IMG/VR virus record: IMGVR_UViG_3300024239_000013
Location: 1 to 64,000 of that record
DNA length: 64,000 bases
Direction: 5' to 3' (one strand)
The notes beneath the pieces were generated by a model, which ran no database searches, was not told the DNA's origin, and worked only from the letters and a program-made list of their open reading frames with translations. This document shows, in pieces, positions 5,151 to 53,556 of this stretch (position 1 is the first letter of the stretch; the number at the start of each line of letters is the position of its first letter). Both the position numbers and the translations under genes were made by a program.

Positions 5151-5378
5151 TTAACAAAATTCTTTTTTTGCTTCCCAAAAATCCTCAGCAGATAGCTTCC
5201 ATCCTTTTTTCTTAGATGCCACGTAAGCCTGTGCATCTTTTAGATTTGGATTGCAGTCATCTTTCTTACATTTTTCAAAGTATGATTTGAGGTCACCGTA
5301 CACTGCTTGACTGATCCCAGTCTTTTCTTGTATTTTGCTTTCGTTAATAAAAGAACTAAATGATTTTATATTTTCCAT
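5151..5378 (-). CDS. Small hypothetical protein with CTS-like N-terminus (MENIKSFSSFINES)
   Basis: Shared N-terminal motif; GATATATA box at 5404-5411. Confidence 0.8.
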   Translation of the reverse strand: MENIKSFSSFINESKIQEKTGISQAVYGDLKSYFEKCKKDDCNPNLKDAQAYVASKKKGWKLSAEDFWEAKKEFC

Positions 5379-30422: not shown

Positions 30423-30543
30423 TGTATTTGTTTTTAAAATTTGCATTACAAATATAAAAAAAAAATCGCAGGATAAAAAAATAATACCGTGAATATTCCC
30501 TTATCCTGCGATTTTCCCCTTATTAAAGGAGAATTTGTCAATA

Positions 30544-36991: not shown

Positions 36992-37059
36992 GTTATGTTA
37001 GGTTATGTTATATTGTATTGTTCCTTGTATATATTTACATGCGTGTTAAAGAGGATGAG

Positions 37060-38140: not shown

Positions 38141-38667
38141 GCTCTCATTTCACCCAATTGCCTGATCCATGTTAACCGACATGATATAGAATGGATCTTT
38201 TTAAAGTAATATACAGAAAATAAAAGAAACCCATTAAAATTTTTGAGAATTTCAACTCAAATAAATCTGTTGATATGATCTTGATGGTTTCCCCGAGATC
38301 AAAGCGGGGGTGATCGAAAGGACTGGTATGGGATCTTCCTAGAATTGCAGCACTAAAAAGAATCGGAATGCTTTAATGTCGCATTCAGCATTTAATTAAA
38401 AGGCAGGTTGATTCCTGCTTTTTTTGCGCAGATTCCATAGGTCTGAGAGTTTTTATTCAAATTCATATATCACAATAAAACAATCAGTATGGTATTTATT
38501 ATACGCATTCTTAAATGCAGCAAAGTGATTTACAGAAACTCGCTAAAAAAAGATCTCTATGTCTTTATCCTAACAAAAACCGGACAATGTTTTAGAGATA
38601 TATAAAACAGAACAAAATAAAAGGTGAATTGTATAAAAAGGCGGACAATAAAAAAATCCCAAAAAAT

Positions 38668-39495
38668 ATGAGCATTAAGAATTATAAAACATTCATAAGT
38701 GAAAGTTCGGATGCAAGTACACTGACAACTGAACAAATAGATTTCCTTGACAAGTATGTTATCGGTAAATGGCATATGAATGATGATGGATTTGTTGATG
38801 TTGATGGCGTGTTTGATTGTTCTAATAAAGGGATATCTGATTTTAAAGGAATAAAGTTTGGTAATGTTGATAGACATTTTAATTGTGCTGATAACAAATT
38901 AACCTCATTAGAAGGCGGTCCAAAAGAGGTTGGTGGTAGTTTTTATTGTAGTCATAACAAAATAACCTCATTAGAATTTGGTCCGAAAGAAGTTGGTGGT
39001 CATTTTTATTGTAATCATAACAACATAACCTCATTAGAAGGTTGTCCAAAAGAGGTCGGCGGTAGTTTTAATTGTTCGTATAACAACTTAATCTCATTAG
39101 AATTTGGTCCAAAAGAGGTGAAAGGATATTTTAATTGCTCAGATAACAACTTAATCTCATTAGAAGGAGCTCCGAAAGAAGTTGACGGTAGTTTTAATTG
39201 CTCAGATAACAACTTAATCTCATTAGAAGGAGCTCCAATAGAAATTGGGCGGGAATTTTATTTGGATCATAACGAAGGTGCATCAGCAGAAACTCTAAAA
39301 TCGATATACAGTAAAATGAAAGAAGCCAAATCTGATTATAAAACAGTTTTAAAATCTTTATGGAAAGGAATATCAATAGGAGATAAAATACTTTTATACA
39401 CACCAGATCTGGATTGGGTTGAAGAAGATGAAGCGGCTAAATTATATAACCTAAAGAAGTACAATAGCATAAAGAAAATGCTCTATTTCATATAA
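38668..39495 (+). CDS. LRR array paralogue 1 (6 x 21-aa repeats)
   Basis: LTSLEGxPxEVxGxFxCxxN repeats with conserved caps; start re-called to MSIKNYKTFISES. Confidence 0.95.
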   Translation: MSIKNYKTFISESSDASTLTTEQIDFLDKYVIGKWHMNDDGFVDVDGVFDCSNKGISDFKGIKFGNVDRHFNCADNKLTSLEGGPKEVGGSFYCSHNKITSLEFGPKEVGGHFYCNHNNITSLEGCPKEVGGSFNCSYNNLISLEFGPKEVKGYFNCSDNNLISLEGAPKEVDGSFNCSDNNLISLEGAPIEIGREFYLDHNEGASAETLKSIYSKMKEAKSDYKTVLKSLWKGISIGDKILLYTPDLDWVEEDEAAKLYNLKKYNSIKKMLYFI

Positions 39496-39509
39496 TATAA
39501 AGAAGCATA

Positions 39510-40205
39510 ATGAAAAGAATCTCAAATTATAAAACATTCATAAATGAAAGTACAGGTGCAAGTACATTGACTGCAGAACAGATCGATTTCCTTGATAGAT
39601 GTGTTAGAGGAACGTGGAAGCTGAATGATGAAGAATTTGTTGATGTTGATGGGAATTTTGATTGTTTCAATAAAGGAATATCTGACTTTAAAGGAATAAA
39701 GTTTGGTAAGGTTAATGGAGATTTTGATTGTTCATATAATAATTTAAGTTCTTTGGAAGGATGTCCAAAAGAAGTTGTTGGACATTTTGATTGCTCACAT
39801 AACAAATTATCTTCATTAGAATTTGCTCCGGAAAGGGTGAGAAGTAGTTTTTATTGCTCACACAACAACTTAACCTCATTAGAATTTGCTCCGGAAAGGG
39901 TGAAAAATAGTTTTTATTGTCAGAATAACAGCTTAACCTCATTAGATGGGGTTCCTAAAAAAGTTGGAGGATTTTTTTATTTTGATCATAATGAAGGGAT
40001 TTCTTCAGAAACCTTAAAAATGATATCCATCCAAATGAAAGTAATCAAATCTGATTATAAAACAGTTTTAAAATCTTTATGGAGTGAAATACCAGTAGAA
40101 GACAAAGTACTTTTATATTCATCAGATCTAGATTGGGTTGAAGAAGATGAAGGATCTAAATTATCTAATCTAAAGAAGTATAAAAACATAAAGAAAATGA
40201 TCTAA
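39510..40205 (+). CDS. LRR array paralogue 2 (4 repeats)
   Basis: Same caps and repeat. Confidence 0.95.
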   Translation: MKRISNYKTFINESTGASTLTAEQIDFLDRCVRGTWKLNDEEFVDVDGNFDCFNKGISDFKGIKFGKVNGDFDCSYNNLSSLEGCPKEVVGHFDCSHNKLSSLEFAPERVRSSFYCSHNNLTSLEFAPERVKNSFYCQNNSLTSLDGVPKKVGGFFYFDHNEGISSETLKMISIQMKVIKSDYKTVLKSLWSEIPVEDKVLLYSSDLDWVEEDEGSKLSNLKKYKNIKKMI

Positions 40206-40221
40206 TATAATATAAAGCAAC

Positions 40222-41106
40222 ATGATGAAAAGAATCTCGAATTATAAAACATTCATAAACGAAAGCTCGAGTGAAAATAAGCTGACTCAGAAACAACTTG
40301 ATTTTCTTAACAACCACGTTAAGGGATATTGGAAGTTGAATGCTGGAGTTGTTGATGTTGATGGCGATTTTGATTGTTTTAGTAAAGGGATATCAGACTT
40401 TAAAGGAATAGTGTTTGGAAAGGTTAGCGGAGATTTTGATTGCTCACGTAATAATTTAAGTTCTTTAAAAGGTGCTCCTAAAGAGGTTGGTGGACATTTT
40501 GATTGTTCACATAACAACTTAAAATCATTAGAAGGAGCTCCAAAACAGGTTAGTGGAGATTTTGATTGCTCACGTAATAATTTAAGTTCTTTGGAAGGTG
40601 CTCCTAAAGAGGTTGGTGGACATTTCCATTGTTCATACAACAAATTAACATCATTAGAAGGTTGTCCTAAAGAAGTTGGTGGACATTTTTATTGTTATGT
40701 TAACAAATTAACCTCATTAGAATTTGGTCCTAAAGAAGTTGGTGGAGATTTCGATTGCTCTGACAACAAATTAACCTCATTAGAATTTGGTCCCGAAGAG
40801 GTTGGGAGAAGCTTTAATTGCTCAAATAACAAATTAACATCATTAGAAGGAGCTCCTAAAGAAGTTGGTGGAGATTTACGATTTTCTCATAATGAGGGAA
40901 TATCAACCAAAACGATAGGTCTTATATTTGACAAAATGAAAAAGTCCAAATTGGACTATTCTGATGCTTTAAAATCTTTATGGAAAGAAATACCAGTAGA
41001 AGACAAAGTACTTTTATATTCATCAGATCTAGATTGGATTGAAGAAGATGAAGCGTCTAAATTAGTTAAGTTAAAGAAGTATAATAGCATAAAGAAAATG
41101 ATCTAA
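40222..41106 (+). CDS. LRR array paralogue 3 (7 repeats)
   Basis: Same caps and repeat. Confidence 0.95.
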   Translation: MMKRISNYKTFINESSSENKLTQKQLDFLNNHVKGYWKLNAGVVDVDGDFDCFSKGISDFKGIVFGKVSGDFDCSRNNLSSLKGAPKEVGGHFDCSHNNLKSLEGAPKQVSGDFDCSRNNLSSLEGAPKEVGGHFHCSYNKLTSLEGCPKEVGGHFYCYVNKLTSLEFGPKEVGGDFDCSDNKLTSLEFGPEEVGRSFNCSNNKLTSLEGAPKEVGGDLRFSHNEGISTKTIGLIFDKMKKSKLDYSDALKSLWKEIPVEDKVLLYSSDLDWIEEDEASKLVKLKKYNSIKKMI

Positions 41107-41125
41107 TATAATATAAAGAAGCATA

Positions 41126-42010
41126 ATGAAAAGAATCTCAAATTATAAAACATTCATAAACGAAAGCTCGAGTGAAAGTACGCTAACACCTGAACAAATT
41201 AATTTCCTTAACAATTATGTTAAGGGATATTGGAAGTTGAATGCTGATGGAGTTGTTGATGTAGATGGCCATTTTAGTTGTTTCAATAAAGGGTTATCAG
41301 ACTTTAAAGGAATAGTGTTTGGAAAGGTTAATAGAGATTTTGATTGTTCAAACAACAACTTAACCTCATTAGAAGGCTGTCCAAAAAAAGTTGGGGGAGA
41401 TTTTTTTTGTTATGTTAACAAATTAACCTCTTTAAAAGGATCGCCAAAAGAGGTTGGTGGTAGTTTTATTTGTTCAGGTAATAACATAATCACATTGGAA
41501 GATGCACCTAAAAAAACCAGAAGAAGCTTTGATTGCTCACATAATAAATTAACATCATTAGAATTCGGTCCAAAAGAGGTTGGAGGCAATTTTAACTGCT
41601 CGCATAATAAATTAACATCATTAGAAGGTGCTCCTGAAGAAGTTGGTGTGGATTTTTATTGTTATTATAACGAATTGAATAATCTAAAGGGTTCCTCGTA
41701 TGTAGTTGGAAGAGATTTTAACTGCTCGGATAATAAATTAACATCATTAGAAGGAGCTCCAAAAGAAATTGGAGATGATTTCATATTAGAAGATAATGAA
41801 GGTGTTTCTTCAGAAATCTTAAAAGAGATATTTAGAAAAATGTTAGAATCCAAATTGGACTATAAAACAGTTTTAAAATCTTTATGGAAAGAAATCTCAA
41901 TAGAAGATAAAATACTTTTATACACACCAGATCTAGACTGGGTTGAAGAAGATGAAGGGTCCAAATTAGTTAAGCTAAAGAAGTATAGCAACATAAAGAA
42001 AATGATCTAG
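41126..42010 (+). CDS. LRR array paralogue 4 (7 repeats)
   Basis: Same caps and repeat. Confidence 0.95.
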   Translation: MKRISNYKTFINESSSESTLTPEQINFLNNYVKGYWKLNADGVVDVDGHFSCFNKGLSDFKGIVFGKVNRDFDCSNNNLTSLEGCPKKVGGDFFCYVNKLTSLKGSPKEVGGSFICSGNNIITLEDAPKKTRRSFDCSHNKLTSLEFGPKEVGGNFNCSHNKLTSLEGAPEEVGVDFYCYYNELNNLKGSSYVVGRDFNCSDNKLTSLEGAPKEIGDDFILEDNEGVSSEILKEIFRKMLESKLDYKTVLKSLWKEISIEDKILLYTPDLDWVEEDEGSKLVKLKKYSNIKKMI

Positions 42011-42024
42011 TATAAATCAGCATA

Positions 42025-42969
42025 ATGAAAAGAATAATAAATTATAAAACATTCGTAAATGAAAGTTCAGGTGCAAGTACACTGACAACTGAACAAATAG
42101 ATTTCCTTAACAGGTATGTTAGGGGGAAATGGAAGTTGAATGCTGGAGTTGTTGATGTTGATGGCGATTTTGATTGTTTTAGTAAAGGGATATCAGACTT
42201 TAAAGGAATAGTGTTTGGAAAGGTTAGCGGAGATTTTGATTGCTCACGTAATAATTTAAGTTCTTTAAAAGGTGCTCCTAAAGAGGTTGGTGGACATTTT
42301 GATTGTTCACATAACAACTTAAAATCATTAGAAGATGCACCTAAAAAAACTGGACGTAGTTTTTATTGTTCGTATAATAAATTAACCTCATTAGAATTTG
42401 CTCCGGAAAGGGTGAGAAGTAGTTTTCATTGTCAGAATAACAGCTTAACCTCATTAGAAGGAGCTCCTAAAGAAGTTGGAGGGTATTTCGATTGCTCAAG
42501 CAACAACTTAACCTCATTAGAAGGAGCTCCAAAAGAGATTGGGTATGATTTCGATTGCTCACACAACAACTTAACCACATTAGAAGGCTGTCCAAAAGAA
42601 ATTGTTGAAGATTTCGATTGCTCACACAACAACTTAACCACATTGGAATTCTCTCCAGAGAAAGTTGGTGTTAATTTTTATTGCTTCAATAACAACTTAA
42701 TTTCATTAAAAGGAGCTCCAAAAGAGATTGGATATGATTTCATATTAAAAAATAATGAAGGAGCATCATCAGAAATCTTAAAAGAGATATTTAGAAAAAT
42801 GTTAGAATCCAAATTGGACTACTCTGATGTTTTAAAATCCCTTTGGGATGAAATACCAATAAAAGATAAAATAGTTCTATATACCCCTGATCTAGACTGG
42901 GTTGAAGAAGATGAAGCGTCTAAATTATCTAAGTTAAAGAAGTATAGCAACATAAAGAAAATGATCTAG
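42025..42969 (+). CDS. LRR array paralogue 5 (8 repeats; mosaic)
   Basis: Same caps and repeat; blocks identical to paralogues 2, 3, 4, 6 and 7. Confidence 0.95.
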   Translation: MKRIINYKTFVNESSGASTLTTEQIDFLNRYVRGKWKLNAGVVDVDGDFDCFSKGISDFKGIVFGKVSGDFDCSRNNLSSLKGAPKEVGGHFDCSHNNLKSLEDAPKKTGRSFYCSYNKLTSLEFAPERVRSSFHCQNNSLTSLEGAPKEVGGYFDCSSNNLTSLEGAPKEIGYDFDCSHNNLTTLEGCPKEIVEDFDCSHNNLTTLEFSPEKVGVNFYCFNNNLISLKGAPKEIGYDFILKNNEGASSEILKEIFRKMLESKLDYSDVLKSLWDEIPIKDKIVLYTPDLDWVEEDEASKLSKLKKYSNIKKMI

Positions 42970-42983
42970 TATAAATCAGCATA

Positions 42984-43868
42984 ATGAAAAGAATAATAAA
43001 TTATAAAACATTCGTAAATGAAAGTTCAGGTGCAAGTACACTGACAACTGAACAAATAGATTTCCTTAACAGGTATGTTAGGGGGAAATGGAAGTTGAAT
43101 AATGATGGGGTTGTTGATGTAGATGGGGATTTTAATTGTTTTAATAAAGGGTTATCAGACTTTAAAGAAATAAAATTTGGAAAAGTTACAGGATATTTTG
43201 ATTGCTCTAAGAACAACTTAACCTCATTAGAGGGTTCACCAAAAAAAGTTGGTGTAGATTTTTATTGTAGTCATAACAAATTAACCTCATTAGAAGGAGC
43301 GCCTATAGAAGTTTATAGAAGTTTCGATTGCAAGGGTAACAAATTAACCTCGTTAGAATTCGGTCCAAAAAAGGTGGAGGGAAATTTTATTTGTTCAATT
43401 AACAAATTAACCTCGTTAGAATTCGGTCCAAAAGGAGTTCCTGGAACTTTCAATTGTTCATTTAACAAATTAACCTCGTTAGAATTCGGTCCAAAAGAAG
43501 TCGGAAGTAGTTTTAATTGCTCATTTAACAACTTAACCTCATTAGAATTCTCTCCAGAGAAAGTTGATGTTGATTTTTATTGCTCGAATAATAAATTAAC
43601 ATCATTAGAAGGTGTCCCAAAAGAAATTGGTGGATATTTCTGGTGTTCTTATAATGTTGGACTATCGACAGATATAATAAATCTTATATTCAGAAAAATG
43701 ATAAAGTATAGATCTGATTATAAAACAGTTTTAAAATCTTTATGGAAAGAAATCTCAATAGAAGACAAGATACTTTTATATTCATCAGATCTAGATTGGA
43801 TTGAAGAAGATGAAGCGGCTAAATTAGCTAAGTTAAAGAAGTATAGCAACATAAAGAAAATGATCTAG
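42984..43868 (+). CDS. LRR array paralogue 6 (7 repeats)
   Basis: Same caps and repeat. Confidence 0.95.
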   Translation: MKRIINYKTFVNESSGASTLTTEQIDFLNRYVRGKWKLNNDGVVDVDGDFNCFNKGLSDFKEIKFGKVTGYFDCSKNNLTSLEGSPKKVGVDFYCSHNKLTSLEGAPIEVYRSFDCKGNKLTSLEFGPKKVEGNFICSINKLTSLEFGPKGVPGTFNCSFNKLTSLEFGPKEVGSSFNCSFNNLTSLEFSPEKVDVDFYCSNNKLTSLEGVPKEIGGYFWCSYNVGLSTDIINLIFRKMIKYRSDYKTVLKSLWKEISIEDKILLYSSDLDWIEEDEAAKLAKLKKYSNIKKMI

Positions 43869-43882
43869 TATAAATCAGCATA

Positions 43883-44830
43883 ATGAAAAGAATAATAAAT
43901 TATAAAACATTCATAAACGAAAGCTCGAGTGAAAATAACTTGACACCTGAACAGATATATTTCCTGAACAAGCAGATTAAGGGGAAATGGAAGTTGAATG
44001 CTGATGGGGTTGTTGATGTTGTTGGAAATATCCATTGTTCACATAGAGAAATATCGGACTTCAAGGGAATAAAATTCGGAAAAGTTACTGGGTATTTTGA
44101 TTGCTCAAATAACAACTTAACATCATTAGAGGGTTGTCCAAAAGAGGTTGGTGGACATTTTTATTGTTCATATAACAGCTTAACATCATTAGAGGGTTGT
44201 CCAAAAGAGGTTGGGGGACATTTTTATTGTCAACGTAACAACTTAACCTCATTAGAAGGTGGTCCAGAAAGAGTGAATGGAGATTTCATTTGTTATGGTA
44301 ACAAATTAGCTTCATTAGAATTTGGACCCAAGGAGGTTAGAGGTACTTTCGATTGCTCAAATAACAAATTAACATCCTTAGAAGGATGCTCTAAAGAGGT
44401 GAATGGAGATTTCGATTGCACATATAACAAATTAACATCATTAGAATTCTCTCCAGTTAAAGTTGGTGGTACTTTCGATTGTTCAGATAATAACTTAACC
44501 TCATTAGAATTTGGACCTGAAGATGTTGGGGGAGGCTTTAATTGTTCCCGTAATAAATTAACCTCATTAGAAGGAGCTCCTAAAGAAGTTGGAGGTACTT
44601 TACGATGTTTTTATAATGAGGGTTTATCAAACGAAACAATAGGTCTTATATTTGAAAAAATGATAAAATCCAGATTGGATTATAAAACAGTTTTAAAATC
44701 TTTATGGGGAGAAATACCAATAAAAGATAAAATAGTTCTATATACCCCTGATCTGGATTGGGTTGAAGGAGATGAAGCGGCTAAATTATCTAATCTAAAG
44801 AAGTATAGCAACATAAAGAAAATGATCTAA
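43883..44830 (+). CDS. LRR array paralogue 7 (8 repeats)
   Basis: Same caps and repeat. Confidence 0.95.
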   Translation: MKRIINYKTFINESSSENNLTPEQIYFLNKQIKGKWKLNADGVVDVVGNIHCSHREISDFKGIKFGKVTGYFDCSNNNLTSLEGCPKEVGGHFYCSYNSLTSLEGCPKEVGGHFYCQRNNLTSLEGGPERVNGDFICYGNKLASLEFGPKEVRGTFDCSNNKLTSLEGCSKEVNGDFDCTYNKLTSLEFSPVKVGGTFDCSDNNLTSLEFGPEDVGGGFNCSRNKLTSLEGAPKEVGGTLRCFYNEGLSNETIGLIFEKMIKSRLDYKTVLKSLWGEIPIKDKIVLYTPDLDWVEGDEAAKLSNLKKYSNIKKMI

Positions 44831-44846
44831 TATAATATAAAAAAAC

Positions 44847-45794
44847 ATGATGAAAAGAATAGTAAATTATAAAACATTCATAAACGAAAGCTCTGGTGAA
44901 AATAACCTGACCCCAGAACAAATTGATTTCCTTAACAACTATGTTAAGGGGAAATGGAAGTTTAATGTTGGAGTTGTTGATATTGATGGCGATTTTAGTT
45001 GTTTCGATAGAGGAATATCTGACTTTAAAGGAATAGTGTTTGGAAGGGTTACCGGTCATTTTGACTGTTCGGATAACAACTTAACATCATTAGAAGGTTG
45101 TCCAAAAGAGGTTGGTGGAAATTTTTATTGTCATTATAACAACTTAACCTCATTAGAAGGTTGTCCAAAAGAGGTTGGCGGACATTTTTATTGTCATTAT
45201 AACAACTTAACATCATTAGAAGGTTGTCCAAAAAAAGTGAATGGAGATTTCGATTGCACAGATAACAACTTAACCTCATTAGAATTCGGTCCAAAAGAGA
45301 TTAATGGACATTTTTATTGTTATGATAACAGCTTAACCTCATTAGAATTTGGTCCCGAAAGAGTGAATGGAGATTTTGATTGTTCGAATAACAACTTAAC
45401 CTCATTAGAATTTGGACCCAAAGAGGTTGGTGGTACTTTCGATTGCTCACGTAATAACTTAAGCTCGTTAGAAGGTGTTCCTGAAAAGCTGAACGGAGTT
45501 TTTTATTTCTCATGTAACAAATTAACCTCATTAGAAGGTGCTCCTAAAAAACTAGGATCACAATTTTTTTGTGAGAATAATGAAGGGATATCAACCAAAA
45601 CGATAAATCTTATATTTGACAAAATGGAAACCTCCAAATCTGATTATAAAACAGTTTTAAAATCTTTATGGAAAGAAATACCAATAGAAGATAAAATACT
45701 TTTATACACCCCAGATCTTGATTGGGTTGAAGAAGATGAAGGGTCTAAATTAGCTAAGTTAAAGAAGTATAGCAACATAAAGAAAATGATCTAA
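44847..45794 (+). CDS. LRR array paralogue 8 (8 repeats)
   Basis: Same caps and repeat. Confidence 0.95.
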   Translation: MMKRIVNYKTFINESSGENNLTPEQIDFLNNYVKGKWKFNVGVVDIDGDFSCFDRGISDFKGIVFGRVTGHFDCSDNNLTSLEGCPKEVGGNFYCHYNNLTSLEGCPKEVGGHFYCHYNNLTSLEGCPKKVNGDFDCTDNNLTSLEFGPKEINGHFYCYDNSLTSLEFGPERVNGDFDCSNNNLTSLEFGPKEVGGTFDCSRNNLSSLEGVPEKLNGVFYFSCNKLTSLEGAPKKLGSQFFCENNEGISTKTINLIFDKMETSKSDYKTVLKSLWKEIPIEDKILLYTPDLDWVEEDEGSKLAKLKKYSNIKKMI

Positions 45795-45812
45795 TATAAT
45801 ATAAAGAGCACA

Positions 45813-46508
45813 ATGAAAAGAATAGTAAATTATAAAACTTTCATAAATGAAAGTGCAGGTGCAAGTACACTGACTTCAGAACAGATAGATTTCCTTAACA
45901 ACTATGTTAAGGGGAAATGGAAGCTGAATGGTGAAGGATTTATTGATATAGATGGTGATTTTAGTTGTTTCGATAAAGGGTTATCAGACTTTAGATGGAT
46001 AAAATTTGGAAAAGTTACAGGGTATTTTTATTGTTCATATAATGGATTGACATCATTAGAGGGAGCACCAAAAAAAGTTGGTTTGAGTTTTTATTGTCAT
46101 AATAACAAATTAACATCATTGGATGGCTCTCCTAAAGAGATTGGTGGAAATTTCGATTGCTCTGACAACAAATTAACCTCATTAGAATTCTCACCCGAAA
46201 GTGTAAAGGGGAGCTTTGATTGCTCATATAACAACTTAACATCATTAGAATTTGGTCCTAAAGAAGTTGGCGGAGATTTACGATTTTCTCATAATGAGGG
46301 ATTGTCAACCAAAACGATAGGTCTTATATTTGACAAAATGGAAAAGTCCAAATTGGACTATAAAACAGTTTTAAAATCTTTATGGAAAGAAATACCAATA
46401 GAAGATAAAATACTTTTATACAATGCGGATCTAGATTGGATTGAAGGAGATGAAGCGGCTAAATTAGCTAAGTTGAATAAATATAGCAACATAAAGAAAA
46501 TGATCTAA
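45813..46508 (+). CDS. LRR array paralogue 9 (4 repeats)
   Basis: Same caps and repeat. Confidence 0.95.
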   Translation: MKRIVNYKTFINESAGASTLTSEQIDFLNNYVKGKWKLNGEGFIDIDGDFSCFDKGLSDFRWIKFGKVTGYFYCSYNGLTSLEGAPKKVGLSFYCHNNKLTSLDGSPKEIGGNFDCSDNKLTSLEFSPESVKGSFDCSYNNLTSLEFGPKEVGGDLRFSHNEGLSTKTIGLIFDKMEKSKLDYKTVLKSLWKEIPIEDKILLYNADLDWIEGDEAAKLAKLNKYSNIKKMI

Positions 46509-46527
46509 TATAATATAAAGAAACATA

Positions 46528-47412
46528 ATGAAAAGAATAGTAAATTATAAAGCATTCATAAACGAAATCTCGAGTGAAAATAACTTGACACCAGAACAGA
46601 TAGATTTCCTTAACAGGTATGTTGAGGGGAAATGGAAGTTGAATGCTGATGGAGCTGTTGATGTAGATGGCGATTTTAGTTGTTTCGATAAAGGGTTATC
46701 AGACTTTAAAGGAATAGTGTTTGAGAAGATTAGTGGAGATTTTGACTGTTCGGCTAACAGCTTAATATCATTAGAAGGTTGTCCAAAAGAGGTTAATGGA
46801 TATTTTTATTGTCATTATAACAAACTAACCTCATTAGAATTTGGTCCTGAAAGTGTAGATGGAGATTTCGATTGTTCGAATAACAATTTAACTTCATTAG
46901 AATTTGGACCCAAAGAGGTTGGTGGAAATTTTGACTGTTCATACAACAAATTAACCTCATTAGAAGTCTGTCCAAAAAAAGTTGGGGGAACTTTCAATTG
47001 TTCATTTAATAAATTAACATCATTAGAATTCAGTCCAAAAGAGGTTGGTGGTAGTTTCAATTGCTCATTTAACAACTTAACATCGTTGCAATTCTCTCCA
47101 GAGAAAGTTGATGCTTATTTTCATTGTTCAAATAACAACTTAACCTCATTAGAAGGGGTATCAAAAGAAGTTGGAGGGAATTTAAGATGTTTTTATAATG
47201 AAGGGCTATCAACCGAAACAATAAATCTTATATTTGACAAAATGATAAAGTCCAAATTGGACTATTCTGATGCTTTAAAATCTTTATGGAAAGAAATACC
47301 AGTAGAAGACAAAGTACTTTTATACACACCCGATCTAGATTGGGTTGAAGAAGACGAAGCGTCTAAATTAGCTAAGCTAAAGAAGTATAGCAGCATAAAG
47401 AAAATGATCTAG
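46528..47412 (+). CDS. LRR array paralogue 10 (7 repeats)
   Basis: Same caps and repeat. Confidence 0.95.
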   Translation: MKRIVNYKAFINEISSENNLTPEQIDFLNRYVEGKWKLNADGAVDVDGDFSCFDKGLSDFKGIVFEKISGDFDCSANSLISLEGCPKEVNGYFYCHYNKLTSLEFGPESVDGDFDCSNNNLTSLEFGPKEVGGNFDCSYNKLTSLEVCPKKVGGTFNCSFNKLTSLEFSPKEVGGSFNCSFNNLTSLQFSPEKVDAYFHCSNNNLTSLEGVSKEVGGNLRCFYNEGLSTETINLIFDKMIKSKLDYSDALKSLWKEIPVEDKVLLYTPDLDWVEEDEASKLAKLKKYSSIKKMI

Positions 47413-47426
47413 TATAAAGAAGAATA

Positions 47427-48374
47427 ATGAAAAGAATAGTAAATTATAAAACTTTTATAAACGAAAGTTCAGGTGCAAGTACACTGACAACTGAACAGAT
47501 AGATTTCCTTAACAGGTATGTTAAGGGGAAATGGAAGTTGAATGATAATGGAGTTGTTGATGTTGATGGTGATTTTAGTTGTTCCGATAAAGAAATATCA
47601 GACTTTAAAGGAATAATATTTGGAAAAGTTACCGGTCATTTCTATTGCTCAAGTAACAACTTAAGATCATTAGAAGGTTGTCCCAAAGAGGTTGGAGGGG
47701 GTTTCAATTGCTCACGTAATGAATTAACATCATTGGAAGGTTGTCCAGAAAGGGTGAATGGAGATTTCATTTGTTATGGTAACAACTTAACCTCATTAGA
47801 AGGTTGTACAGAAAGAGTGAATGGAGATTTCATTTGTTCGGCTAACAACTTAACCTCATTAGAAGGCTGCCCTAAGGAAGTTGAGGGATTTTTCAATTGT
47901 TCATTTAATAAATTAGCTTCTTTAGAAGGATGTCCTGGAGAAATTGGAAGTAGTTTTTATTGTTCGTATAACAAATTAACCTCATTAGAATTTGGCCCAG
48001 AAATGGTGAATGGAGATTTCGTTTGTTCAGATAACAAATTAACCTCGTTAGAATTCAGTCCAAAAGAAGTTGGTGGTAATTTTATTTGTTCAGATAACAA
48101 CTTAACATCATTAGAGGGAATATCAAAAAAAGTTGGGGGATCTTTATGGTGTTCTTCTAATGAAGGACTATCAACCGAAACGATAGATCTTATATTTGAT
48201 AAAATCATAAAGTTCAAATTGGACTATTTGGATGCTTTAAATTTTTTATGGGAGGATATCCCAATAGAAGATAAAGTACTTTTATACACACCCGATTTAG
48301 ATTGGATTGAAGGAGAGGAAGCGGTTAAATTATCTAATCTAAAGAAGTATAGTAAAATAAAGAAAATGATATAA
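47427..48374 (+). CDS. LRR array paralogue 11 (8 repeats)
   Basis: Same caps and repeat. Confidence 0.95.
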   Translation: MKRIVNYKTFINESSGASTLTTEQIDFLNRYVKGKWKLNDNGVVDVDGDFSCSDKEISDFKGIIFGKVTGHFYCSSNNLRSLEGCPKEVGGGFNCSRNELTSLEGCPERVNGDFICYGNNLTSLEGCTERVNGDFICSANNLTSLEGCPKEVEGFFNCSFNKLASLEGCPGEIGSSFYCSYNKLTSLEFGPEMVNGDFVCSDNKLTSLEFSPKEVGGNFICSDNNLTSLEGISKKVGGSLWCSSNEGLSTETIDLIFDKIIKFKLDYLDALNFLWEDIPIEDKVLLYTPDLDWIEGEEAVKLSNLKKYSKIKKMI

Positions 48375-48418: not shown

Positions 48419-48877
48419 ATGAGATATATTCAACTTTACGAGAACTTCTCGGTATTAAATGAGACTACCATTGATAGATTTAGTCCTGATGTTATTAGAG
48501 GTCAAGATGCAATCGATTCTCAATTTTTTAATAAATTGATGCCAAAAACAGCAAAAACAACATCAGAAGCTCAGAACAGGATATTATCATTTTCTGGCGG
48601 TACTATGTTTGTACATTATCAATACTTCATTGTTACACCAAAGGGAAATACCCCCGATAGACCTATTTATAGAATACATAATAGCCAATATTGGTTAAAT
48701 GACTACCAATTAATTAGGCAGGGTAAAAATGGACAGGATGTAAACGTAACCGAGATTTACATAACCGACATTACAGATCCCAAAAACGAGATTAGACTCG
48801 GATCGGTTTATGTTGATACTAGAATTTATTTAGATGAACAAAAAATTGTTTTTGATGTACTCAAGAGTCATTCATAA
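48419..48877 (+). CDS. Hypothetical protein with CTS-like N-terminus (MRYIQLYENFSVLNE)
   Basis: Shared N-terminal motif. Confidence 0.8.
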   Translation: MRYIQLYENFSVLNETTIDRFSPDVIRGQDAIDSQFFNKLMPKTAKTTSEAQNRILSFSGGTMFVHYQYFIVTPKGNTPDRPIYRIHNSQYWLNDYQLIRQGKNGQDVNVTEIYITDITDPKNEIRLGSVYVDTRIYLDEQKIVFDVLKSHS

Positions 48878-48969: not shown

Positions 48970-49476
48970 ATGAATAAAATATTAACATTAAGCGCATTGA
49001 TAGCTCCGGTTATTTATGAAGCTCAGATCACAGTGATGAACCAGAGTTCCATAGAATCGGGACTAAAGATAGTAAAAGGATTAATCAAAAGAGGGTTTAC
49101 TCCTAAAGCTGCAGCTGCAATAGCAGGAAATATGTGGCAGGAATCTAGGTTTAATCCAAAGATTAGCCACAAAAACTCTCAGCACGTTGGTATAGTACAA
49201 TGGGGTGGTAAGAGAAAGCAAAACCTAATGAAAAGATCTGGATGGAGCAGATTAGAAACACAATTAGATTTTGTTAAACATGAATTTGATACAAACGATC
49301 AGTTTAAAAAGCTACTAAAGAACATCGAAAAGGTGTCATTGAAAAAAGCAACCGAAGCAGTTGCAAGAACCTATGAGGGATGCAGAGATCCTCATCACCC
49401 AAATAGGAATTCGGCTGCACAAAAACTGTTTGAAGCATATAAAAAAGAAAAACAGACAGTAGATATAATAGAATAA
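48970..49476 (+). CDS. Phage tail lysozyme (Phage_lysozyme2-like)
   Basis: AAAIAGNMWQESRFNP, GIVQW...R, QLDF; start re-called after GATATATA. Confidence 0.85.
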   Translation: MNKILTLSALIAPVIYEAQITVMNQSSIESGLKIVKGLIKRGFTPKAAAAIAGNMWQESRFNPKISHKNSQHVGIVQWGGKRKQNLMKRSGWSRLETQLDFVKHEFDTNDQFKKLLKNIEKVSLKKATEAVARTYEGCRDPHHPNRNSAAQKLFEAYKKEKQTVDIIE

Positions 49477-49495: not shown

Positions 49496-49771
49496 ATGAA
49501 AAACATAAAACTATATGAAAATTTCATTAACGAAAAAATTTCATCCGAAGCTGTTTATATTCACAATATAACCGGTGCTGGACAACAATCTATTCAAAAC
49601 TTTATTGACGACAATAATATAGACGCTGATAAATTAGCGGAATATGTGAAAGTAAATAAGGATCATAAAGAAAAGTATGATGTAAGAGATATGATTTCAG
49701 GAACTGGACTAGGATCAGATAAAAATAGAAGAGAAAATTTTATTAAAAAATTCAAGAGAGGTAAAAAATAG
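49496..49771 (+). CDS. Small protein with CTS-like N-terminus (MKNIKLYENFINE)
   Basis: Shared N-terminal motif. Confidence 0.8.
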   Translation: MKNIKLYENFINEKISSEAVYIHNITGAGQQSIQNFIDDNNIDADKLAEYVKVNKDHKEKYDVRDMISGTGLGSDKNRRENFIKKFKRGKK

Positions 49772-49839: not shown

Positions 49840-50802
49840 ATGACAGAAGAAAAACTTTTTAGATGGACTAATTATTCAGTAAAGTCACTAGAAAATTTAA
49901 TTGAAGGGATGGAAAAACATCATCCGGAAGATTATAAAAAGATAAAGGAAATAAGTGATCGTTTACTATTGTATTATAGGGGAGATAATATATTAACAGA
50001 AAAACAAAAAAATACTCTAGATTCTTTATCTAAAGATTGGTACATATCACCAGAAAACGGAGGGGTTAATATTGGATATATGTATGCTTCGGATTGGGGA
50101 TTATCCATTAAAAATTATTGGGAAGAGGATACGGAATCTGCGAGAAAAAAAAGACTAAAGCTTTTTGAGGATCTTAAAAAAATAAAATTTAATGAGGTTT
50201 ATTCTCTTTCTTTGAGATCGTGTGGATTAGAAGAATTTTGGCCAAATATGCCAAAAAGAACTTCTAGATTTGATTGTTCCTATAATAAGATAGAAAGTCT
50301 AGTTGGAGGTCCAGAATATGCTAGTGAATACGATTTCTGTGGGAATAATATTAAAAGCTTTGATGGGTTACCTGACAATGTTAAAGAATTAGATTGCAGT
50401 CATAACCCAATAGAGGATTTTTCAACCCTAAAAGTTAAAGAATTATTAAGGTTTAGATGTCGGGATACACATATAAAAAATCTAATAGGTTGTCCTAAAG
50501 TTACAACCTTTTTAGACGTATCAGGATGTAAGTTAACCTCAGTTGAAGGAGCCCCGTTAAATTTAACCTTAAGAGAGGTTAATTTTGGGGAAAATGTGGT
50601 TAGTGAAAAAACATTAAAACTTGCTTTCAATGCAATGAAAAAAGCTAAAGGAGATTATGGTAAAGGATTGGATAAAATATGGAAAAAAATACCTATAGAA
50701 GACCAAATACAAATGTATAAGGACAATCCAAATCTTACTAATGATGAGGTAAAAAAATATTACAATTTAAAAAAATATTTTGATATAAAAACTTTTATAT
50801 AA
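49840..50802 (+). CDS. Divergent LRR protein related to the array, lacking the CTS-like N-terminus
   Basis: FDCSYNKIESLVGGP-type repeats; C-cap VSEKTL...DY...L..IWK.IPIED...LKKY; class II promoter. Confidence 0.85.
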   Translation: MTEEKLFRWTNYSVKSLENLIEGMEKHHPEDYKKIKEISDRLLLYYRGDNILTEKQKNTLDSLSKDWYISPENGGVNIGYMYASDWGLSIKNYWEEDTESARKKRLKLFEDLKKIKFNEVYSLSLRSCGLEEFWPNMPKRTSRFDCSYNKIESLVGGPEYASEYDFCGNNIKSFDGLPDNVKELDCSHNPIEDFSTLKVKELLRFRCRDTHIKNLIGCPKVTTFLDVSGCKLTSVEGAPLNLTLREVNFGENVVSEKTLKLAFNAMKKAKGDYGKGLDKIWKKIPIEDQIQMYKDNPNLTNDEVKKYYNLKKYFDIKTFI

Positions 50803-51327: not shown

Positions 51328-52131
51328 ATGAAAAAAATAGCATCATTTAATGAGTTTGTAAATGAGGATAACGGGCTTCTAGGACACATAGCTCCATTAT
51401 TGGGTAGCATTGAAATAGATGGTAAAAAAAAAGCAGAGGAAATTAGAAGCCAGGATACAGGTTCTGAGATTGATCAAGGTGATCTTTTACCGTCCGATTT
51501 TAATCCATTTCCAGGTAATGATGATTTCACTCTTTATATGCAACATCAGCAAGGAGTAGCTGGAGCAAAGGGATTAATAGAAGCATCTTTAGGAACTGGT
51601 AAATTAGCATCAGATACGATCAAAACCAAGAATGGTAAAAAATATGCAAATTTAATTTCAAATGTTCCTAGCGACAAACCTCAAATTAAAAATTCCATAA
51701 TAAAAGCATTAGACTCGGGTGATCAAAAAACTGCATCGGTTTTATTCCTAAATATGTGGAAGGAAAAATGGAACCGAGCATATAAAGATGCAAAGATCGA
51801 AATAGAAAAGCCACAAAACTCTACTGCTAAATCAGCTATAAAAAAATACAGTTCAGCATATGGGGTTCCTTTTGATTTTGCTATAACCGTAGCAAAATTG
51901 GAATCCGGATTTAAGCCTAATGTAGGAAACAATACCTATAAAGGATTATTTGCTCTAAGTCAAAATGGATTTAATAAATATGTTCCTGGAGGAAATATTT
52001 TTAACCCAGATGATAATGCTAAAGCAGGAATTCAAAGTCTAAGAGATAATATAAAAGAATTCAAAAAACAACTAGGTGATAAAACTCTAGCCTCTCTTAA
52101 TATTGCTCAATGGGCAAAAAATATAGCTTAA
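51328..52131 (+). CDS. SLT-type lytic transglycosylase with CTS-like N-terminus
   Basis: AKLESGFKP, YKGLF, FNPDDNAKAG; MKKIASFNEFVNE. Confidence 0.8.
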   Translation: MKKIASFNEFVNEDNGLLGHIAPLLGSIEIDGKKKAEEIRSQDTGSEIDQGDLLPSDFNPFPGNDDFTLYMQHQQGVAGAKGLIEASLGTGKLASDTIKTKNGKKYANLISNVPSDKPQIKNSIIKALDSGDQKTASVLFLNMWKEKWNRAYKDAKIEIEKPQNSTAKSAIKKYSSAYGVPFDFAITVAKLESGFKPNVGNNTYKGLFALSQNGFNKYVPGGNIFNPDDNAKAGIQSLRDNIKEFKKQLGDKTLASLNIAQWAKNIA

Positions 52132-52446: not shown

Positions 52447-52469
52447 AAATAAAATATAATAAGATAGCA

Positions 52470-52502
52470 AAAAAACTCTAGTGAAAACTAGAGTTTTTTT
52501 TT
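52470..52502. terminator. Bidirectional intrinsic terminator
   Basis: AAAAAACTCTAGT-GAAA-ACTAGAGTTTTTTTT. Confidence 0.9.
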
Positions 52503-53199: not shown

Positions 53200-53556
53200 A
53201 TGGAAAAAATGATAAAAAATTACAATAATTTTATTAATGAGTCCAAAAAAGAATCTTTTGAAGAGTTTTCTTTAATTAGATTAAACGGGGCTAAAAAAAT
53301 AGCAGAAAATGCTAAAGAAAAAGGTGGTGATGCTCTACTTACTTACCATCATTTTAAAGTTAAGATACCAACTTATAAAAAAGCTAAAGATGGTGAATTT
53401 GATATGATAAATTCTAAAAAAGAATATGAAACCCTTTTAGAAAAATTATATAAATCAACCAAGGATAATATGAAAATAAGCCAAGTTGAATTTCAGGAAT
53501 TGGTTGGTAGAATAGAAGTATTAGGAGAACTTATTATCAGAAAGGAGATAGAATAA
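53200..53556 (+). CDS. Hypothetical protein with CTS-like N-terminus (MIKNYNNFINES)
   Basis: Shared motif; GATATATA at 53188. Confidence 0.8.
   Translation: MEKMIKNYNNFINESKKESFEEFSLIRLNGAKKIAENAKEKGGDALLTYHHFKVKIPTYKKAKDGEFDMINSKKEYETLLEKLYKSTKDNMKISQVEFQELVGRIEVLGELIIRKEIE

What the first reader, a model, noticed from the sequence alone, without database searches (positions are those of the whole stretch)
38668..48374. Eleven-gene tandem LRR repertoire with constant caps and hypervariable binding face (VLR-like library in a phage)
Seen: 11 intact head-to-tail paralogues separated by 14-19 nt. Each has a near-constant N-cap (MKRIxNYKTFINES...FKGIxFG) and C-cap (...IEDKxLLY...LDW.EEDE..KL.KLKKY..IKKMI) around 4-8 exact 21-aa repeats (6,4,7,7,8,7,8,8,4,7,8; 74 in total by my count). 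Framework residues L-T-S-L-E-x-x-P...G-x-F-x-C-x-x-N are conserved, while the x positions in GxFxCxxN vary widely (D/H/Y/N/S/T/I/F/R/G). Known: in LRR solenoids these alternate beta-strand positions form the concave ligand-binding face, and lamprey VLRs build diversity from constant caps plus variable LRR modules. Inference: an expanded, diversifying family of binders, for example inhibitors of variable host defence proteins or receptor binders. No paralogue is broken, which suggests selection to keep all of them.
Basis: partly seen in the sequence, partly recalled or inferred. Interest (0 to 1): 0.9.

Follow-up and report, generated by a model that had tools for sequence, protein, structure and literature searches.

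The report
Phage array of injected LRR binders
A jumbo phage carries eleven tandem genes for small leucine-rich-repeat binding proteins whose binding face varies from copy to copy, and each starts with a phage-T4-style "pack me into the capsid" tag, so they are probably a repertoire of proteins injected with the DNA to bind different host targets.

Summary
There are 11 intact + strand genes (38668-48374) with gaps of 14-19 nt and 74 exact 21-aa LRR units (6,4,7,7,8,7,8,8,4,7,8), plus a 12th diverged paralogue at 49840-50802. AlphaFold gives a confident capped LRR solenoid (pLDDT 91.5) closest to type-III-secretion effector LRRs.

Variability sits at unit positions 21, 2, 4 and 5, the canonical concave-face x positions. 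There pN/pS is 0.73 against 0.22 elsewhere (P=1.5e-6), which is not above 1. Related phages carry the array at the same locus with different gene numbers, whole-unit indels and gene-conversion tracts.

New here: the "constant N-cap" begins with a 13-aa disordered leader. It keeps the four functional residues of the T4 capsid-targeting sequence (Y..FI.E). It is position-locked on unrelated neighbours, including SLT and CHAP cell-wall hydrolases, and follows a GATATATA box.

In related contigs that box also precedes a gp21-family prohead protease gene lying just upstream of a gp23-type capsid gene.

Best reading (about 0.5): late-made, capsid-packaged, co-injected LRR binders, an expanded analogue of T4 Ip1-3 anti-restriction proteins.

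"VLR-like" holds only as an analogy: there is no somatic assembly. The window contig's own protease and capsid genes were not seen.

The parts
38597..38604 (+). GATATATA promoter-like box upstream of the first array gene; the only such box before the array, so g1-g11 are probably one transcription unit
   Evidence: 10 boxes in the window (5.5 expected); 9 of the 10 lie 4-64 nt upstream of a gene start on the same strand, 8 of them before leader or leader-like genes. Across 9 loci, 54 of 69 boxes lie 0-68 nt upstream of a gene start. In related contig L067 one lies 27 nt upstream of the protease gene that directly precedes the capsid gene.
38668..39495 (+). g1, LRR paralogue, 275 aa, 6 units; leader variant MSIKNYKTFISE
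   Evidence: Its orthologue in L006 has 4 units, an exact 42-aa indel.
39510..40205 (+). g2, LRR paralogue, 231 aa, 4 units
   Evidence: Its orthologue in L006 has 3 units, an exact 21-aa indel.
40222..41106 (+). g3, LRR paralogue, 294 aa, 7 units
   Evidence: Shares a 205-nt exact tract with g5 and a 78-nt tract with g10.
41126..42010 (+). g4, LRR paralogue, 294 aa, 7 units
   Evidence: Orthologue at L007:1101-1985, 89% aa identity.
42025..42969 (+). g5, LRR paralogue, 314 aa, 8 units
   Evidence: Mosaic: 205 nt identical to g3 and 137 nt identical to g6.
42984..43868 (+). g6, LRR paralogue, 294 aa, 7 units
43883..44830 (+). g7, LRR paralogue, 315 aa, 8 units; the copy that was modelled
   Evidence: AF2 pLDDT 91.5, pTM 0.85; residues 1-16 disordered; 4-helix C-cap at 250-314. 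Orthologue at L007:2000-2884 has 7 units.
44847..45794 (+). g8, LRR paralogue, 315 aa, 8 units
   Evidence: The C-terminal part is 90% identical to L006:11967-12398.
45813..46508 (+). g9, LRR paralogue, 231 aa, 4 units
46528..47412 (+). g10, LRR paralogue, 294 aa, 7 units
47427..48374 (+). g11, LRR paralogue, 315 aa, 8 units
48419..48877 (+). Non-LRR 152-aa protein with a leader variant (MRYIQLYENFSVLNE)
   Evidence: No Pfam or PHROG hit.
48970..49476 (+). Phage_lysozyme2 (tail-lysozyme type) protein, GATATATA box 4 nt upstream
   Evidence: PF18013, E=1e-27.
49496..49771 (+). Non-LRR 91-aa protein with the full leader (MKNIKLYENFINE)
49840..50802 (+). g12, diverged 12th paralogue (320 aa): irregular LRRs, same C-cap, different N-terminal region containing NLIE
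   Evidence: (LRR_4).
51328..52131 (+). SLT lytic transglycosylase carrying the leader (MKKIASFNEFVNE), box 23 nt upstream
   Evidence: The orthologue in L018 keeps the leader.
52469..52500 (.). Bidirectional terminator-like hairpin closing the + strand block
53200..53556 (+). Non-LRR 118-aa protein with the leader (MEKMIKNYNNFINE), box 4 nt upstream
26833..27630 (+).
5151..5378 (-). 75-aa protein with the leader (MENIKSFSSFINE), box 25 nt upstream

Best explanation
The locus encodes a germline repertoire of small capped LRR solenoid proteins. The repeats are 21 aa long and stack a conserved cysteine (F-x-C-x-x-N). A constant 4-helix C-cap and a constant helix/hairpin N-cap frame 4-8 repeats.

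Solvent-facing x positions on the concave sheet (unit positions 21, 2, 4, 5) differ from copy to copy, so each paralogue presents a different binding surface.

Each protein starts with a roughly 13-residue disordered leader, MK..x-Y-x-x-F-I-N-E|S. This is a T4-type capsid-targeting sequence.

Proposed sequence of events:
1. The genes are transcribed from a GATATATA promoter-like box that, in related contigs, also precedes the prohead protease gene upstream of the capsid gene.
2. The leader takes the protein into the prohead core.
3. The gp21-family prohead protease removes the leader after the (L/I)-x-E motif.
4. The mature LRR proteins are ejected into the cell with the DNA.
5. In the cell each binds a different or variant host protein. 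By analogy with T4 Ip1, Ip2 and Ip3, the most likely targets are defence proteins that must be neutralised before phage genes are expressed.

The array diversifies by unequal crossing-over (whole-unit and whole-gene gain and loss), by gene conversion between paralogues, and by near-neutral or diversifying substitution at the concave positions.

Shown: gene structure, fold prediction, location of variability, selection pattern, array flux, leader and box distribution, and a T4-type head module in related LRR-array contigs.

Inferred: packaging, cleavage, injection and the nature of the targets.
For: Structure and variability:
- AF2 pLDDT 91.5. Foldseek top hits are LRRs of injected T3SS effectors SspH1/SspH2/YopM/IpaH, with InlJ also listed.
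- Entropy maxima fall at positions 5, 21 and 2, and family-wide at 4, 2, 21 and 5.
- pN/pS is 0.73 vs 0.22, P=1.5e-6, and 0.77 vs 0.25 between orthologues.

Array flux:
- L006 and L007 orthologues differ by exact 21- or 42-aa indels and by gene content.
- The syntenic locus in L010 has 6 genes.
- Exact tracts of 205, 137 and 78 nt lie in a 70%-identity background.

Leader:
- The motif [YF]..[FS][ILV].?[NF]E occurs 16 times in 17,321 residues. It always starts at residue 7-8, apart from one at 18, and is found on 10 LRR genes plus 5 unrelated proteins, including SLT and CHAP hydrolases.
- Residues 1-16 are disordered in the model.
- Leader pN/pS is 0.17 with undiminished pS, so the constraint is on the peptide, not the RNA.
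- T4 IpII/IpIII begin MKTYQEFIAE. In T4, residues 4 and 7 determine targeting and residues 8 and 10 determine processing (PMC9026906). Y, F, I and E have the same spacing here.
- Leaderless homologues exist in related phages, so the leader is a separable module.

Protease link:
- Contigs that carry capped, leader-bearing LRR genes (L009 and L021) also encode a Peptidase_S77 (gp21-family) protein directly upstream of a PF07068 gp23-type capsid protein.
- That protease starts MPQLQSINE, against T4 gp21 MNEPQLLIE. The capsid protein starts MKLINE and has LNES within residues 31-60 in 81 of 81 head loci.
- L027 has leader genes immediately downstream of its capsid gene.

Regulon: 54 of 69 GATATATA boxes lie 0-68 nt upstream of gene starts. 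Most of those genes carry the leader or are LRR genes, and one is the L067 protease gene.

Precedent: T4 Ip1-3 share only the leader, and each blocks a distinct GmrSD enzyme (PMC12373910; PMC3012670).

Control: Tenacibaculum phage PTm1 (100 kb examined) shows no N-terminal enrichment of the motif.
Against: - The protease and capsid genes of the window's own contig were not found in five attempts. The link therefore rests on relatives whose LRR proteins are about 46% identical.
- No proteomic evidence exists for packaging or cleavage.
- In some relatives more than half of the genes in a 20-kb stretch carry the leader. That would mean an unusually large number of packaged species.
- The core head-module loci themselves hold few strict-leader genes (15 of 1744).
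- Omega at concave sites is not above 1, so an arms race is not demonstrated.
- No host target is known. Pfam finds nothing in ten other leader proteins.
Confidence: 0.5

Rival explanations
1. The LRR proteins are virion-surface adhesins or receptor-binding proteins. A constant cap docks on the tail, baseplate or head, the variable LRR face binds cell-surface structures, and the 11 copies widen or switch host range.
For: Late-type promoter box shared with structural genes. LRR or beta-helix domains occur in tail-associated host-recognition proteins of the jumbo phage Goslar (PMC13742148). The constant C-cap is found only on these proteins and could be a docking module. The array lies next to a tail-lysozyme-type gene.
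Against: The proteins are small (231-315 aa) with no fibre, coiled-coil or trimerisation region in the model. They carry a leader with the T4 CTS residues, which in T4 directs proteins to the inside of the prohead. Related phages have solitary leaderless copies among non-structural genes. The nearest folds are intracellular effector LRRs.
Confidence: 0.15
2. The LRR proteins are made late and act in the infected cytoplasm without being packaged, for example by binding host proteases or defence proteins or by chaperoning assembly. The shared N-terminal leader would have another role, such as a stability or degradation tag or a recognition tag for a phage factor.
For: Packaging is not shown. Leader genes are very numerous in some relatives. 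Few strict leaders occur inside the core head modules. Leaderless homologues exist, so the LRR domain can presumably work without the leader.
Against: The leader matches the four functional CTS residues at the same spacing and ends in the gp21-type (L/I)xE motif. It sits on peptidoglycan hydrolases, which are typical ejected virion proteins. The same (L/I)NE motif is invariant at the N-terminus and at residues 31-60 of the clade's capsid protein and at the protease N-terminus.
Confidence: 0.22
3. Programmed diversification: a diversity-generating retroelement or a VLR-like cassette-copying system rewrites the variable codons.
For: Codons at positions 2, 5 and 21 are 97-100% NNY, mostly NAT, giving the D/N/H/Y/S/T/I/F/G/R set that adenine mutagenesis of AAY codons would give. 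Exact conversion tracts occur between paralogues.
Against: None of the five window ORFs of 300 aa or more shows a reverse-transcriptase hit. Orthologues from other samples differ at only 15% of concave codons, with pN/pS 0.77, so there is no hypermutation. The second codon base at position 2 is almost always A. Every gene is complete and no cassette fragments are present.
Confidence: 0.03
4. Assembly artefact or neutral junk: the array is a mis-assembled collapse or expansion of fewer genes, or a recent duplication without function.
For: The related scaffold L006 has an N gap inside its array, and several relatives' contigs end in arrays.
Against: Paralogues are 63-78% identical in protein and units 70% identical in DNA, and the longest exact repeat is 205 nt. 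Independent assemblies from other samples carry the same family at the same locus. All 11 genes are intact with dN/dS of 0.2-0.4 in caps and framework.
Confidence: 0.02

Closest known systems
T4 internal proteins Ip1/Ip2/Ip3 (IPI, IPII, IPIII) and CTS-bearing proteins of T-even phages
   Same: A short N-terminal leader is shared by otherwise unrelated proteins. The Y, F, I and E residues have the same spacing as the T4 CTS MKTYQEFIAE, and the leader ends in an (L/I)xE protease motif. The genes are non-core and differ between related phages. Each T4 Ip specifically blocks one variant of a defence enzyme.
   Different: The leader is three residues longer. The cargo is a single LRR family expanded to 11-12 tandem paralogues with a modular variable face, not unrelated small proteins. 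The host is probably Bacteroidota and the phage a 319-kb jumbo phage. Packaging and targets are untested.
LRR domains of type-III-secreted effectors (YopM, SspH1/2, SlrP, IpaH) and Listeria InlJ
   Same: Short (20-22 aa) bacterial-type LRR solenoid that binds targets on the concave face; these are the best Foldseek matches. InlJ is also listed among the matches; that it has 21-residue repeats with a stacked cysteine is recalled, not tested here. Like the T3SS effectors, these proteins would be delivered into another cell.
   Different: The matches are weak (E about 1e-3, TM 0.4-0.5, 18-30% identity). There is no NEL E3-ligase domain; the C-terminus is a family-specific 75-aa four-helix cap found in only about 120 clusters. 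Delivery would be by phage ejection, not a secretion system.
Lamprey/hagfish variable lymphocyte receptors (VLR)
   Same: Constant N- and C-caps around a variable number of LRR modules, with diversity concentrated on concave-face residues. A hagfish VLR appears among the fold matches (rank 28).
   Different: There is no incomplete germline gene, no cassette library and no somatic assembly. All copies are complete genes and diversity is inherited. The caps are not homologous to LRRNT/LRRCT beyond weak Pfam LRRNT scores.
Ejection/inner-body proteins of giant phages (phiKZ, 201phi2-1, SPN3US)
   Same: Many paralogous head-internal proteins are processed by a gp21-related protease after Glu and ejected into the host (PMC5694885; PMC9026906).
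   Different: Those propeptides are mostly over 100 residues with an S/A/G-x-E motif. Here the leader is T4-length with (L/I)-x-E, and the capsid protein is gp23-type.

Membership tests
Leucine-rich repeat superfamily (short bacterial type) | Tandem repeats with the LxxLxLxxN(x)L core | tested here: met
   74 units of exactly 21 aa, x-F-x-C-x-x-N-x-L-x-x-L. Pfam LRR_4 scores at or just above its cut-off on g7 and g12 and below it on g2.
Leucine-rich repeat superfamily (short bacterial type) | Curved solenoid fold with a parallel beta-sheet on the concave side and terminal caps | tested here: met
   AF2 model pLDDT 91.5, with one F-x strand per unit and helical caps. Foldseek hits are all LRR proteins. 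This is a predicted, not a solved, structure.
T4-type capsid-targeted internal proteins (CTS proteins) | 10-20 residue N-terminal leader shared by otherwise unrelated proteins of the same phage | tested here: met
   The motif is locked at residues 7-8 on 10 LRR and 5 non-LRR proteins and has no internal occurrence, apart from one at residue 18 of an ORF whose start is uncertain.
T4-type capsid-targeted internal proteins (CTS proteins) | Targeting residues (T4 Y4, F7) and processing residues (T4 I8, E10) present | tested here: met
   Window Y7, F10, I11 and E13 have the same spacing as T4 IpII/IpIII. The roles of these residues come from PMC9026906.
T4-type capsid-targeted internal proteins (CTS proteins) | gp21-family prohead protease and gp23-type capsid protein in the same genome | tested here: inconclusive
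   Present in related LRR-array contigs (L009/L067 and L021/L065: PF03420 and PF07068). Not found for the window's own contig, of which only 71 of 319 kb could be read.
T4-type capsid-targeted internal proteins (CTS proteins) | Protein present in the capsid, leader cleaved, protein ejected with the DNA | not testable with these tools
   Needs virion proteomics and infection assays.
VLR-type somatically assembled LRR receptors | Incomplete germline gene completed by copying from flanking LRR cassettes | tested here: not met
   All 11 genes are complete, each with its own start, stop and both caps. No orphan cassettes lie in 36.9-54 kb.
Diversity-generating retroelement targets | Reverse transcriptase plus template/variable repeat pair with adenine-specific differences | tested here: not met
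   No RT among the five window ORFs of 300 aa or more. Orthologues are not hypermutated at the variable codons. The rest of the contig was not examined.
IpaH/SspH (NEL) E3-ligase effectors | C-terminal NEL ubiquitin-ligase domain after the LRR | tested here: not met
   The C-terminus is a 75-aa four-helix cap with no Pfam hit and no structural match.

The most novel reading that the evidence does not exclude
A large clade of uncultured T4-like jumbo phages, probably infecting Bacteroidota, uses the T4 capsid-targeting mechanism on a much larger scale. Islands of leader-bearing genes would encode a cargo of injected effectors. Within that cargo, a tandem LRR family works as an inherited, module-shuffling repertoire of binders, each tuned to a different host (defence) protein. 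This would be an offensive counterpart of LRR-based immune receptor repertoires, delivered as protein at the moment of infection.
Probability: 0.4. Interest if true: 0.85.

Novelty: new variant of a known kind. Interest (0 to 1): 0.72.

Why it matters
Injected phage proteins act before any phage gene is expressed. They are therefore the first line of counter-defence, yet only a handful, in T-even coliphages, have known targets.

If this reading is right, three things follow:
- The T4 capsid-targeting signal is far older and more widespread than the T-even phages, and it can be read directly from sequence. That gives a simple way to list the injected cargo of hundreds of uncultured jumbo phages.
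- Phages have built a modular binder scaffold (constant caps, 4-8 exchangeable 21-aa units, three or four variable residues per unit) that evolves by unit shuffling. This would be a natural analogue of engineered repeat-protein binders and of LRR immune repertoires.
- Each paralogue becomes a probe for an unknown host protein, probably a defence factor, in Bacteroidota.

The leader also offers a possible tag for loading foreign proteins into jumbo-phage capsids.

Tried and rejected
- **Alternative genetic code.** Making TAG, TGA or TAA sense does not lengthen ORFs in a meaningful way. The array genes end in TAA or TAG and the next gene is out of frame.
- **Near-identical DNA in cultured phages.** None found. 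tblastn finds only partial LRR matches in a Vibrio phage, huge uncultured phages, Lak phages and Listeria prophage internalin-like genes.
- **DGR or programmed diversification.** Rejected; see the rival explanations.
- **RNA-level explanation of the leader.** Rejected because synonymous divergence in the leader is not reduced, while pN/pS is 0.17.
- **Finding the window contig's own capsid or protease gene.** All five attempts missed it: PTm1 capsid protein as a single query; a word-indexed protein search, looking for the 319,334-bp contig length; a capsid profile scan; and two subclade capsid queries. Walking the contig 10 kb at a time was judged too costly.
- **Function of other leader proteins.** Ten from relatives gave no Pfam hit.
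- **C-cap function.** No Pfam hit, no structural neighbour, and only viral hypothetical clusters in the ESM Atlas.
- **Sigma-70 promoter scan.** Uninformative: 69 found against 76 expected.
- **Rfam on the upstream non-coding region.** No match.
- **Solvent exposure from coordinates.** Concave-face assignment therefore rests on the DSSP strand positions and the standard LRR register.
- **Cellular genomes.** One match in 185,579 species, a Saprospirales MAG contig, so the capped family is essentially viral.

Full report

Yes, in every detail. The ORF list and my own translation give eleven intact + strand genes from 38668 to 48374. Lengths are 275/231/294/294/314/294/315/315/231/294/315 aa, and the intergenic gaps are 14-19 nt. 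The gaps all read TATAA(TATAA)AG... or TATAAATCAGCATA.

The F.C..N anchors are spaced by exactly 21 residues. Tandem Repeats Finder sees 63-nt periods in every gene.

A twelfth, diverged paralogue sits at 49840-50802, with the same C-cap, irregular repeats and a different N-terminal region. The code is standard.

The window is the first 64 kb of a 319,334-bp JGI contig that IMG/VR lists as viral. For one conserved protein, the nearest cultured relatives are the Tenacibaculum jumbo phages PTm1, PTm5 and pT24, followed by the Lak Prevotella megaphages.

**2. What the proteins are**

Pfam sees only weak LRR_4/LRRNT signals, and PHROGs places them in two families of unknown function.

An AlphaFold2 model of g7, built on an alignment of the paralogues and 18 homologues (A1), is confident: pLDDT 91.5, pTM 0.85. 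Its parts are:
- residues 1-16, disordered (pLDDT<50);
- a helix (22-31) and a beta-hairpin that cap the N-terminus;
- solenoid turns with two short strands each, F-x and E-V;
- a C-cap of four helices (250-314).

The best PDB matches are LRR domains of injected type-III effectors (SspH1, SspH2, YopM, IpaH, SlrP). Listeria InlJ is further down the list. All are at modest scores (E about 1e-3, TM 0.4-0.5).

In the viral structure library the best hits are two proteins labelled Marseillevirus LCMAC102, at 32-35% identity, one of them a dUTPase-LRR fusion.

A profile of the C-cap alone finds only 120 clusters among 1.84 billion representatives. In each, the cap sits at the extreme C-terminus of a protein of about 350 aa or less. 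The LRR type itself is far more common: at least 6,600 hits, including a roughly 500-aa class with other N-terminal domains.

Only one of 185,579 species genomes has a copy, on a contig of a Saprospirales MAG.

**3. Where the variation is**

In the 74 units, F1, N6 and L11 are invariant, and C3, L8, S10, P15 and V18 nearly so. Entropy peaks at positions 5, 21, 14 and 2. In 522 units from 92 relatives the peaks are positions 4, 2, 21 and 5, at 3.2-3.3 bits each, rich in Y, D, N, S, H, R and W.

In the standard LRR register (LxxLxLxxN) these are positions 3, 5, 7 and 8: the outward-facing residues of the concave strand and its exit. This fits the modelled F-x strand.

All-pair comparisons of units are near synonymous saturation (pS about 0.55), so I used closer pairs:
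- **Five orthologue pairs from related contigs.** pN/pS is 0.17 (leader), 0.43 (N-cap), 0.25 (other repeat positions), 0.77 (concave positions) and 0.34 (C-cap).
- **41 independent nearest-neighbour unit pairs (84-98% identical).** Concave positions show 58 non-synonymous and 17 synonymous changes (0.73). The other positions show 71 and 90 (0.22). Fisher P=1.5e-6. The concave value does not differ from neutrality (P=0.29).

So the face is free to vary or is diversifying, but positive selection is not proven.

A side observation: codons at positions 2, 5 and 21 are 97-100% NNY.

**4. The array is in flux**

- L006, a 46.7-kb ENA scaffold, is syntenic: a DUF5661 gene, a 1.8-kb gap, then the array. 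Its g1 and g2 orthologues have 4 and 3 units instead of 6 and 4. A g8-like gene follows directly, and then a paralogue absent from the window.
- L007 has the g4 orthologue followed at once by a g7 orthologue with 7 units rather than 8, then two paralogues with no counterpart in the window.
- All indels are exact multiples of 21 aa.
- A 289-kb contig (L010) shares gene order with window 31.8-37 kb and has six LRR genes at the same place. Other relatives have 3+3, 4+2 or 3.
- Within the window, exact tracts of 205 nt (g3/g5), 137 nt (g5/g6) and 78 nt (g3/g10) lie in a background of about 70% unit identity. These are gene-conversion or recombination mosaics.

An assembly artefact is very unlikely given this divergence and the independent assemblies.

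**5. The leader**

The first 13 residues (MKRIxNYKTFINE, then S) are not part of the fold and are not specific to the LRR genes.

The motif [YF]..[FS][ILV].?[NF]E occurs 16 times in the 115 predicted proteins of the window (17,321 residues). It always starts at residue 7 or 8, except once at residue 18 of an ORF whose start is uncertain. It is found on ten LRR genes and on five unrelated proteins:
- a 75-aa ORF (5151-5378, - strand);
- a CHAP hydrolase (26833);
- a 91-aa ORF (49496);
- an SLT transglycosylase (51328);
- a 118-aa ORF (53200).

Gene 48419 has a looser version.

Distant homologues keep it in the form MKNLKTY..(L/M)FE, and some related phages have leaderless copies. Related contigs are full of unrelated genes that start MK(H/N/Y)(I/L)K.(Y/F)..(F/L).E. 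PTm1 shows no such enrichment.

T4 IpII and IpIII start MKTYQEFIAE. In that capsid-targeting sequence, residues 4 and 7 determine targeting and residues 8 and 10 determine processing by the prohead protease (PMC9026906). The window leader has Y, F, I and E at exactly those relative positions.

**6. Link to a T4-type head**

A capsid-protein profile scan of IMG/VR returned loci on two contigs that also carry leader-bearing capped LRR genes: the 348-kb contig of L009 (four LRR genes) and the 138-kb contig of L021 (one).

There a 654-aa protein with a Peptidase_S77 (T4 gp21 family) domain lies directly upstream of a PF07068 gp23-type capsid protein:
- The protease begins MPQLQSINE. T4 gp21 begins MNEPQLLIE, whose LIE-9 fits its own cleavage logo.
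- The capsid protein begins MKLINE and carries LNES within residues 31-60 in all 81 head loci examined. In T4, gp23 is matured after LTE in the same N-terminal region, though the two sites do not align exactly.
- In another T4-like jumbo contig (L027), two small genes with perfect leaders follow the capsid gene.

The clade's protease thus very probably cuts after (L/I)-N/x-E, which is how the leaders end.

I could not find these genes for the window's own contig. That is the main gap.

**7. A shared promoter-like box**

GATATATA occurs ten times in the window (5.5 expected). Nine copies lie 4-64 nt upstream of a gene start on the same strand. Eight of those genes carry the leader or a leader-like N-terminus, and they include g1 (box at 38597), the CHAP and SLT genes, and the tail-lysozyme-type gene.

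Over nine loci, 54 of 69 boxes lie 0-68 nt upstream of a start. The downstream genes are mostly leader genes, LRR genes or arrays, and they include the protease gene that directly precedes the capsid gene in L067.

The array therefore appears to belong to the same expression class as that protease gene, which I take to be late. A bidirectional terminator at 52469-52500 ends the + strand block.

**8. Mechanism, with levels of support**

Shown: a tandem family of capped LRR proteins with a variable concave face, under purifying selection elsewhere, turning over by unit and gene indels and by conversion. Also shown: a position-locked, peptide-constrained, disordered leader shared with unrelated proteins, including two cell-wall hydrolases; a shared upstream box; and a gp21/gp23-type head module in related LRR-array phages.

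Inferred, at about 0.6: the leader is a capsid-targeting propeptide cut by the prohead protease, so the LRR proteins are packaged and ejected.

Inferred, at about 0.35-0.4: their targets are host defence proteins, by analogy with Ip1-3.

Rivals are surface adhesins or receptor-binding proteins, unpackaged late cytoplasmic proteins, programmed diversification, and artefact. Each is weighed in its own section.

**9. Comparison with the known, and novelty**

The locus works like the T4 Ip system and looks like a T3SS-effector LRR. It is not a VLR system, not a DGR target and not a NEL effector: in each case the defining feature was tested and not met.

Six full-text searches, four of them naming leucine-rich repeats, found no description of this LRR family, of LRR arrays in jumbo phages, or of this leader outside T-even phages.

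I class it as a new variant of a known kind: CTS-delivered internal proteins, here built on an expanded modular LRR scaffold in uncultured jumbo phages.

Noticed in passing
window 36992-38667 (core element about 37571-37618): A 1.7-kb non-coding, GC-rich stretch (up to 55% GC against 32% overall) lies between the divergent DUF5661 gene and the array. It contains 26-, 33- and 10-nt tandem repeats. It is 96% identical to L006 over 1,063 nt. A 45-nt hairpin-forming core (CACCCTGGGTGG...GGCCC) is conserved in five contigs at the same position. There is no Rfam match and few covarying pairs. It could be an ncRNA, an origin or a regulatory element.
   Followed up: partly
window 12195-12314 (-): Rfam tRNA hit (37 bits, full model) spread over 120 nt, which suggests an intron or insert. 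ARAGORN finds no tRNA in the window.
   Followed up: no
window 38668-48374, unit positions 2, 5 and 21: The hypervariable codons are 97-100% NNY, mostly NAT, so E, K and Q are almost absent although D, N and H are common. This resembles the outcome of adenine mutagenesis of AAY codons, but orthologues are not hypermutated and none of the five window ORFs of 300 aa or more gave a reverse-transcriptase hit.
   Followed up: partly
L009, L010, L011, L016, L018 (related jumbo-phage contigs); L005 (LR756501, 735 kb); L001 (Vibrio phage VB_VaC_TDDLMA): Islands in which many unrelated small genes (about half of the genes in L009 by eye) start with the MK(H/N/Y)(I/L)K.(Y/F)..(F/L).E leader. The 735-kb huge phage and the 195-kb Vibrio phage show ...F(I/L)NE and ...FLAE leaders next to their LRR genes. 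Ten such proteins had no Pfam hit.
   Followed up: partly
Homologues P0044, P0083; BFVD A0A481YU71: The same LRR type is fused to dUTPase (P0044, and 'Marseillevirus LCMAC102' dUTP diphosphatase) and to DUF5661 (P0083). DUF5661 is also the gene next to the array (window 36161-36991, -). The 'Marseillevirus' bin proteins are 32-35% identical to g7 and may be mis-binned phage sequence.
   Followed up: no
window 28800-29648 and 29700-30446 (-): Two adjacent paralogous genes (282 and 248 aa) both match PHROG 15656, of unknown function. This is a second small tandem duplication in the window.
   Followed up: no
L002 (T4) 16062-16886 (-): T4 gp2, the DNA-end protector that travels with the DNA, begins MAIFQIINES. 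This ends in the same INE|S as the window leader. It may be coincidence.
   Followed up: no
L019 1394-4014 (-): A related contig has five tandem paralogues starting MT(R/Q)E(E/A)F...(L/E)..(K/R).(Y/W). This is another tandem family in the same group of phages.
   Followed up: no
L023 (PTm1) 27026-28805: In Tenacibaculum phage PTm1 a 98-aa ORF annotated 'E3 ubiquitin-protein ligase SlrP' (an LRR-type annotation) sits next to a 'DNA transfer protein'. That is a possible injected LRR protein in a cultured relative.
   Followed up: no
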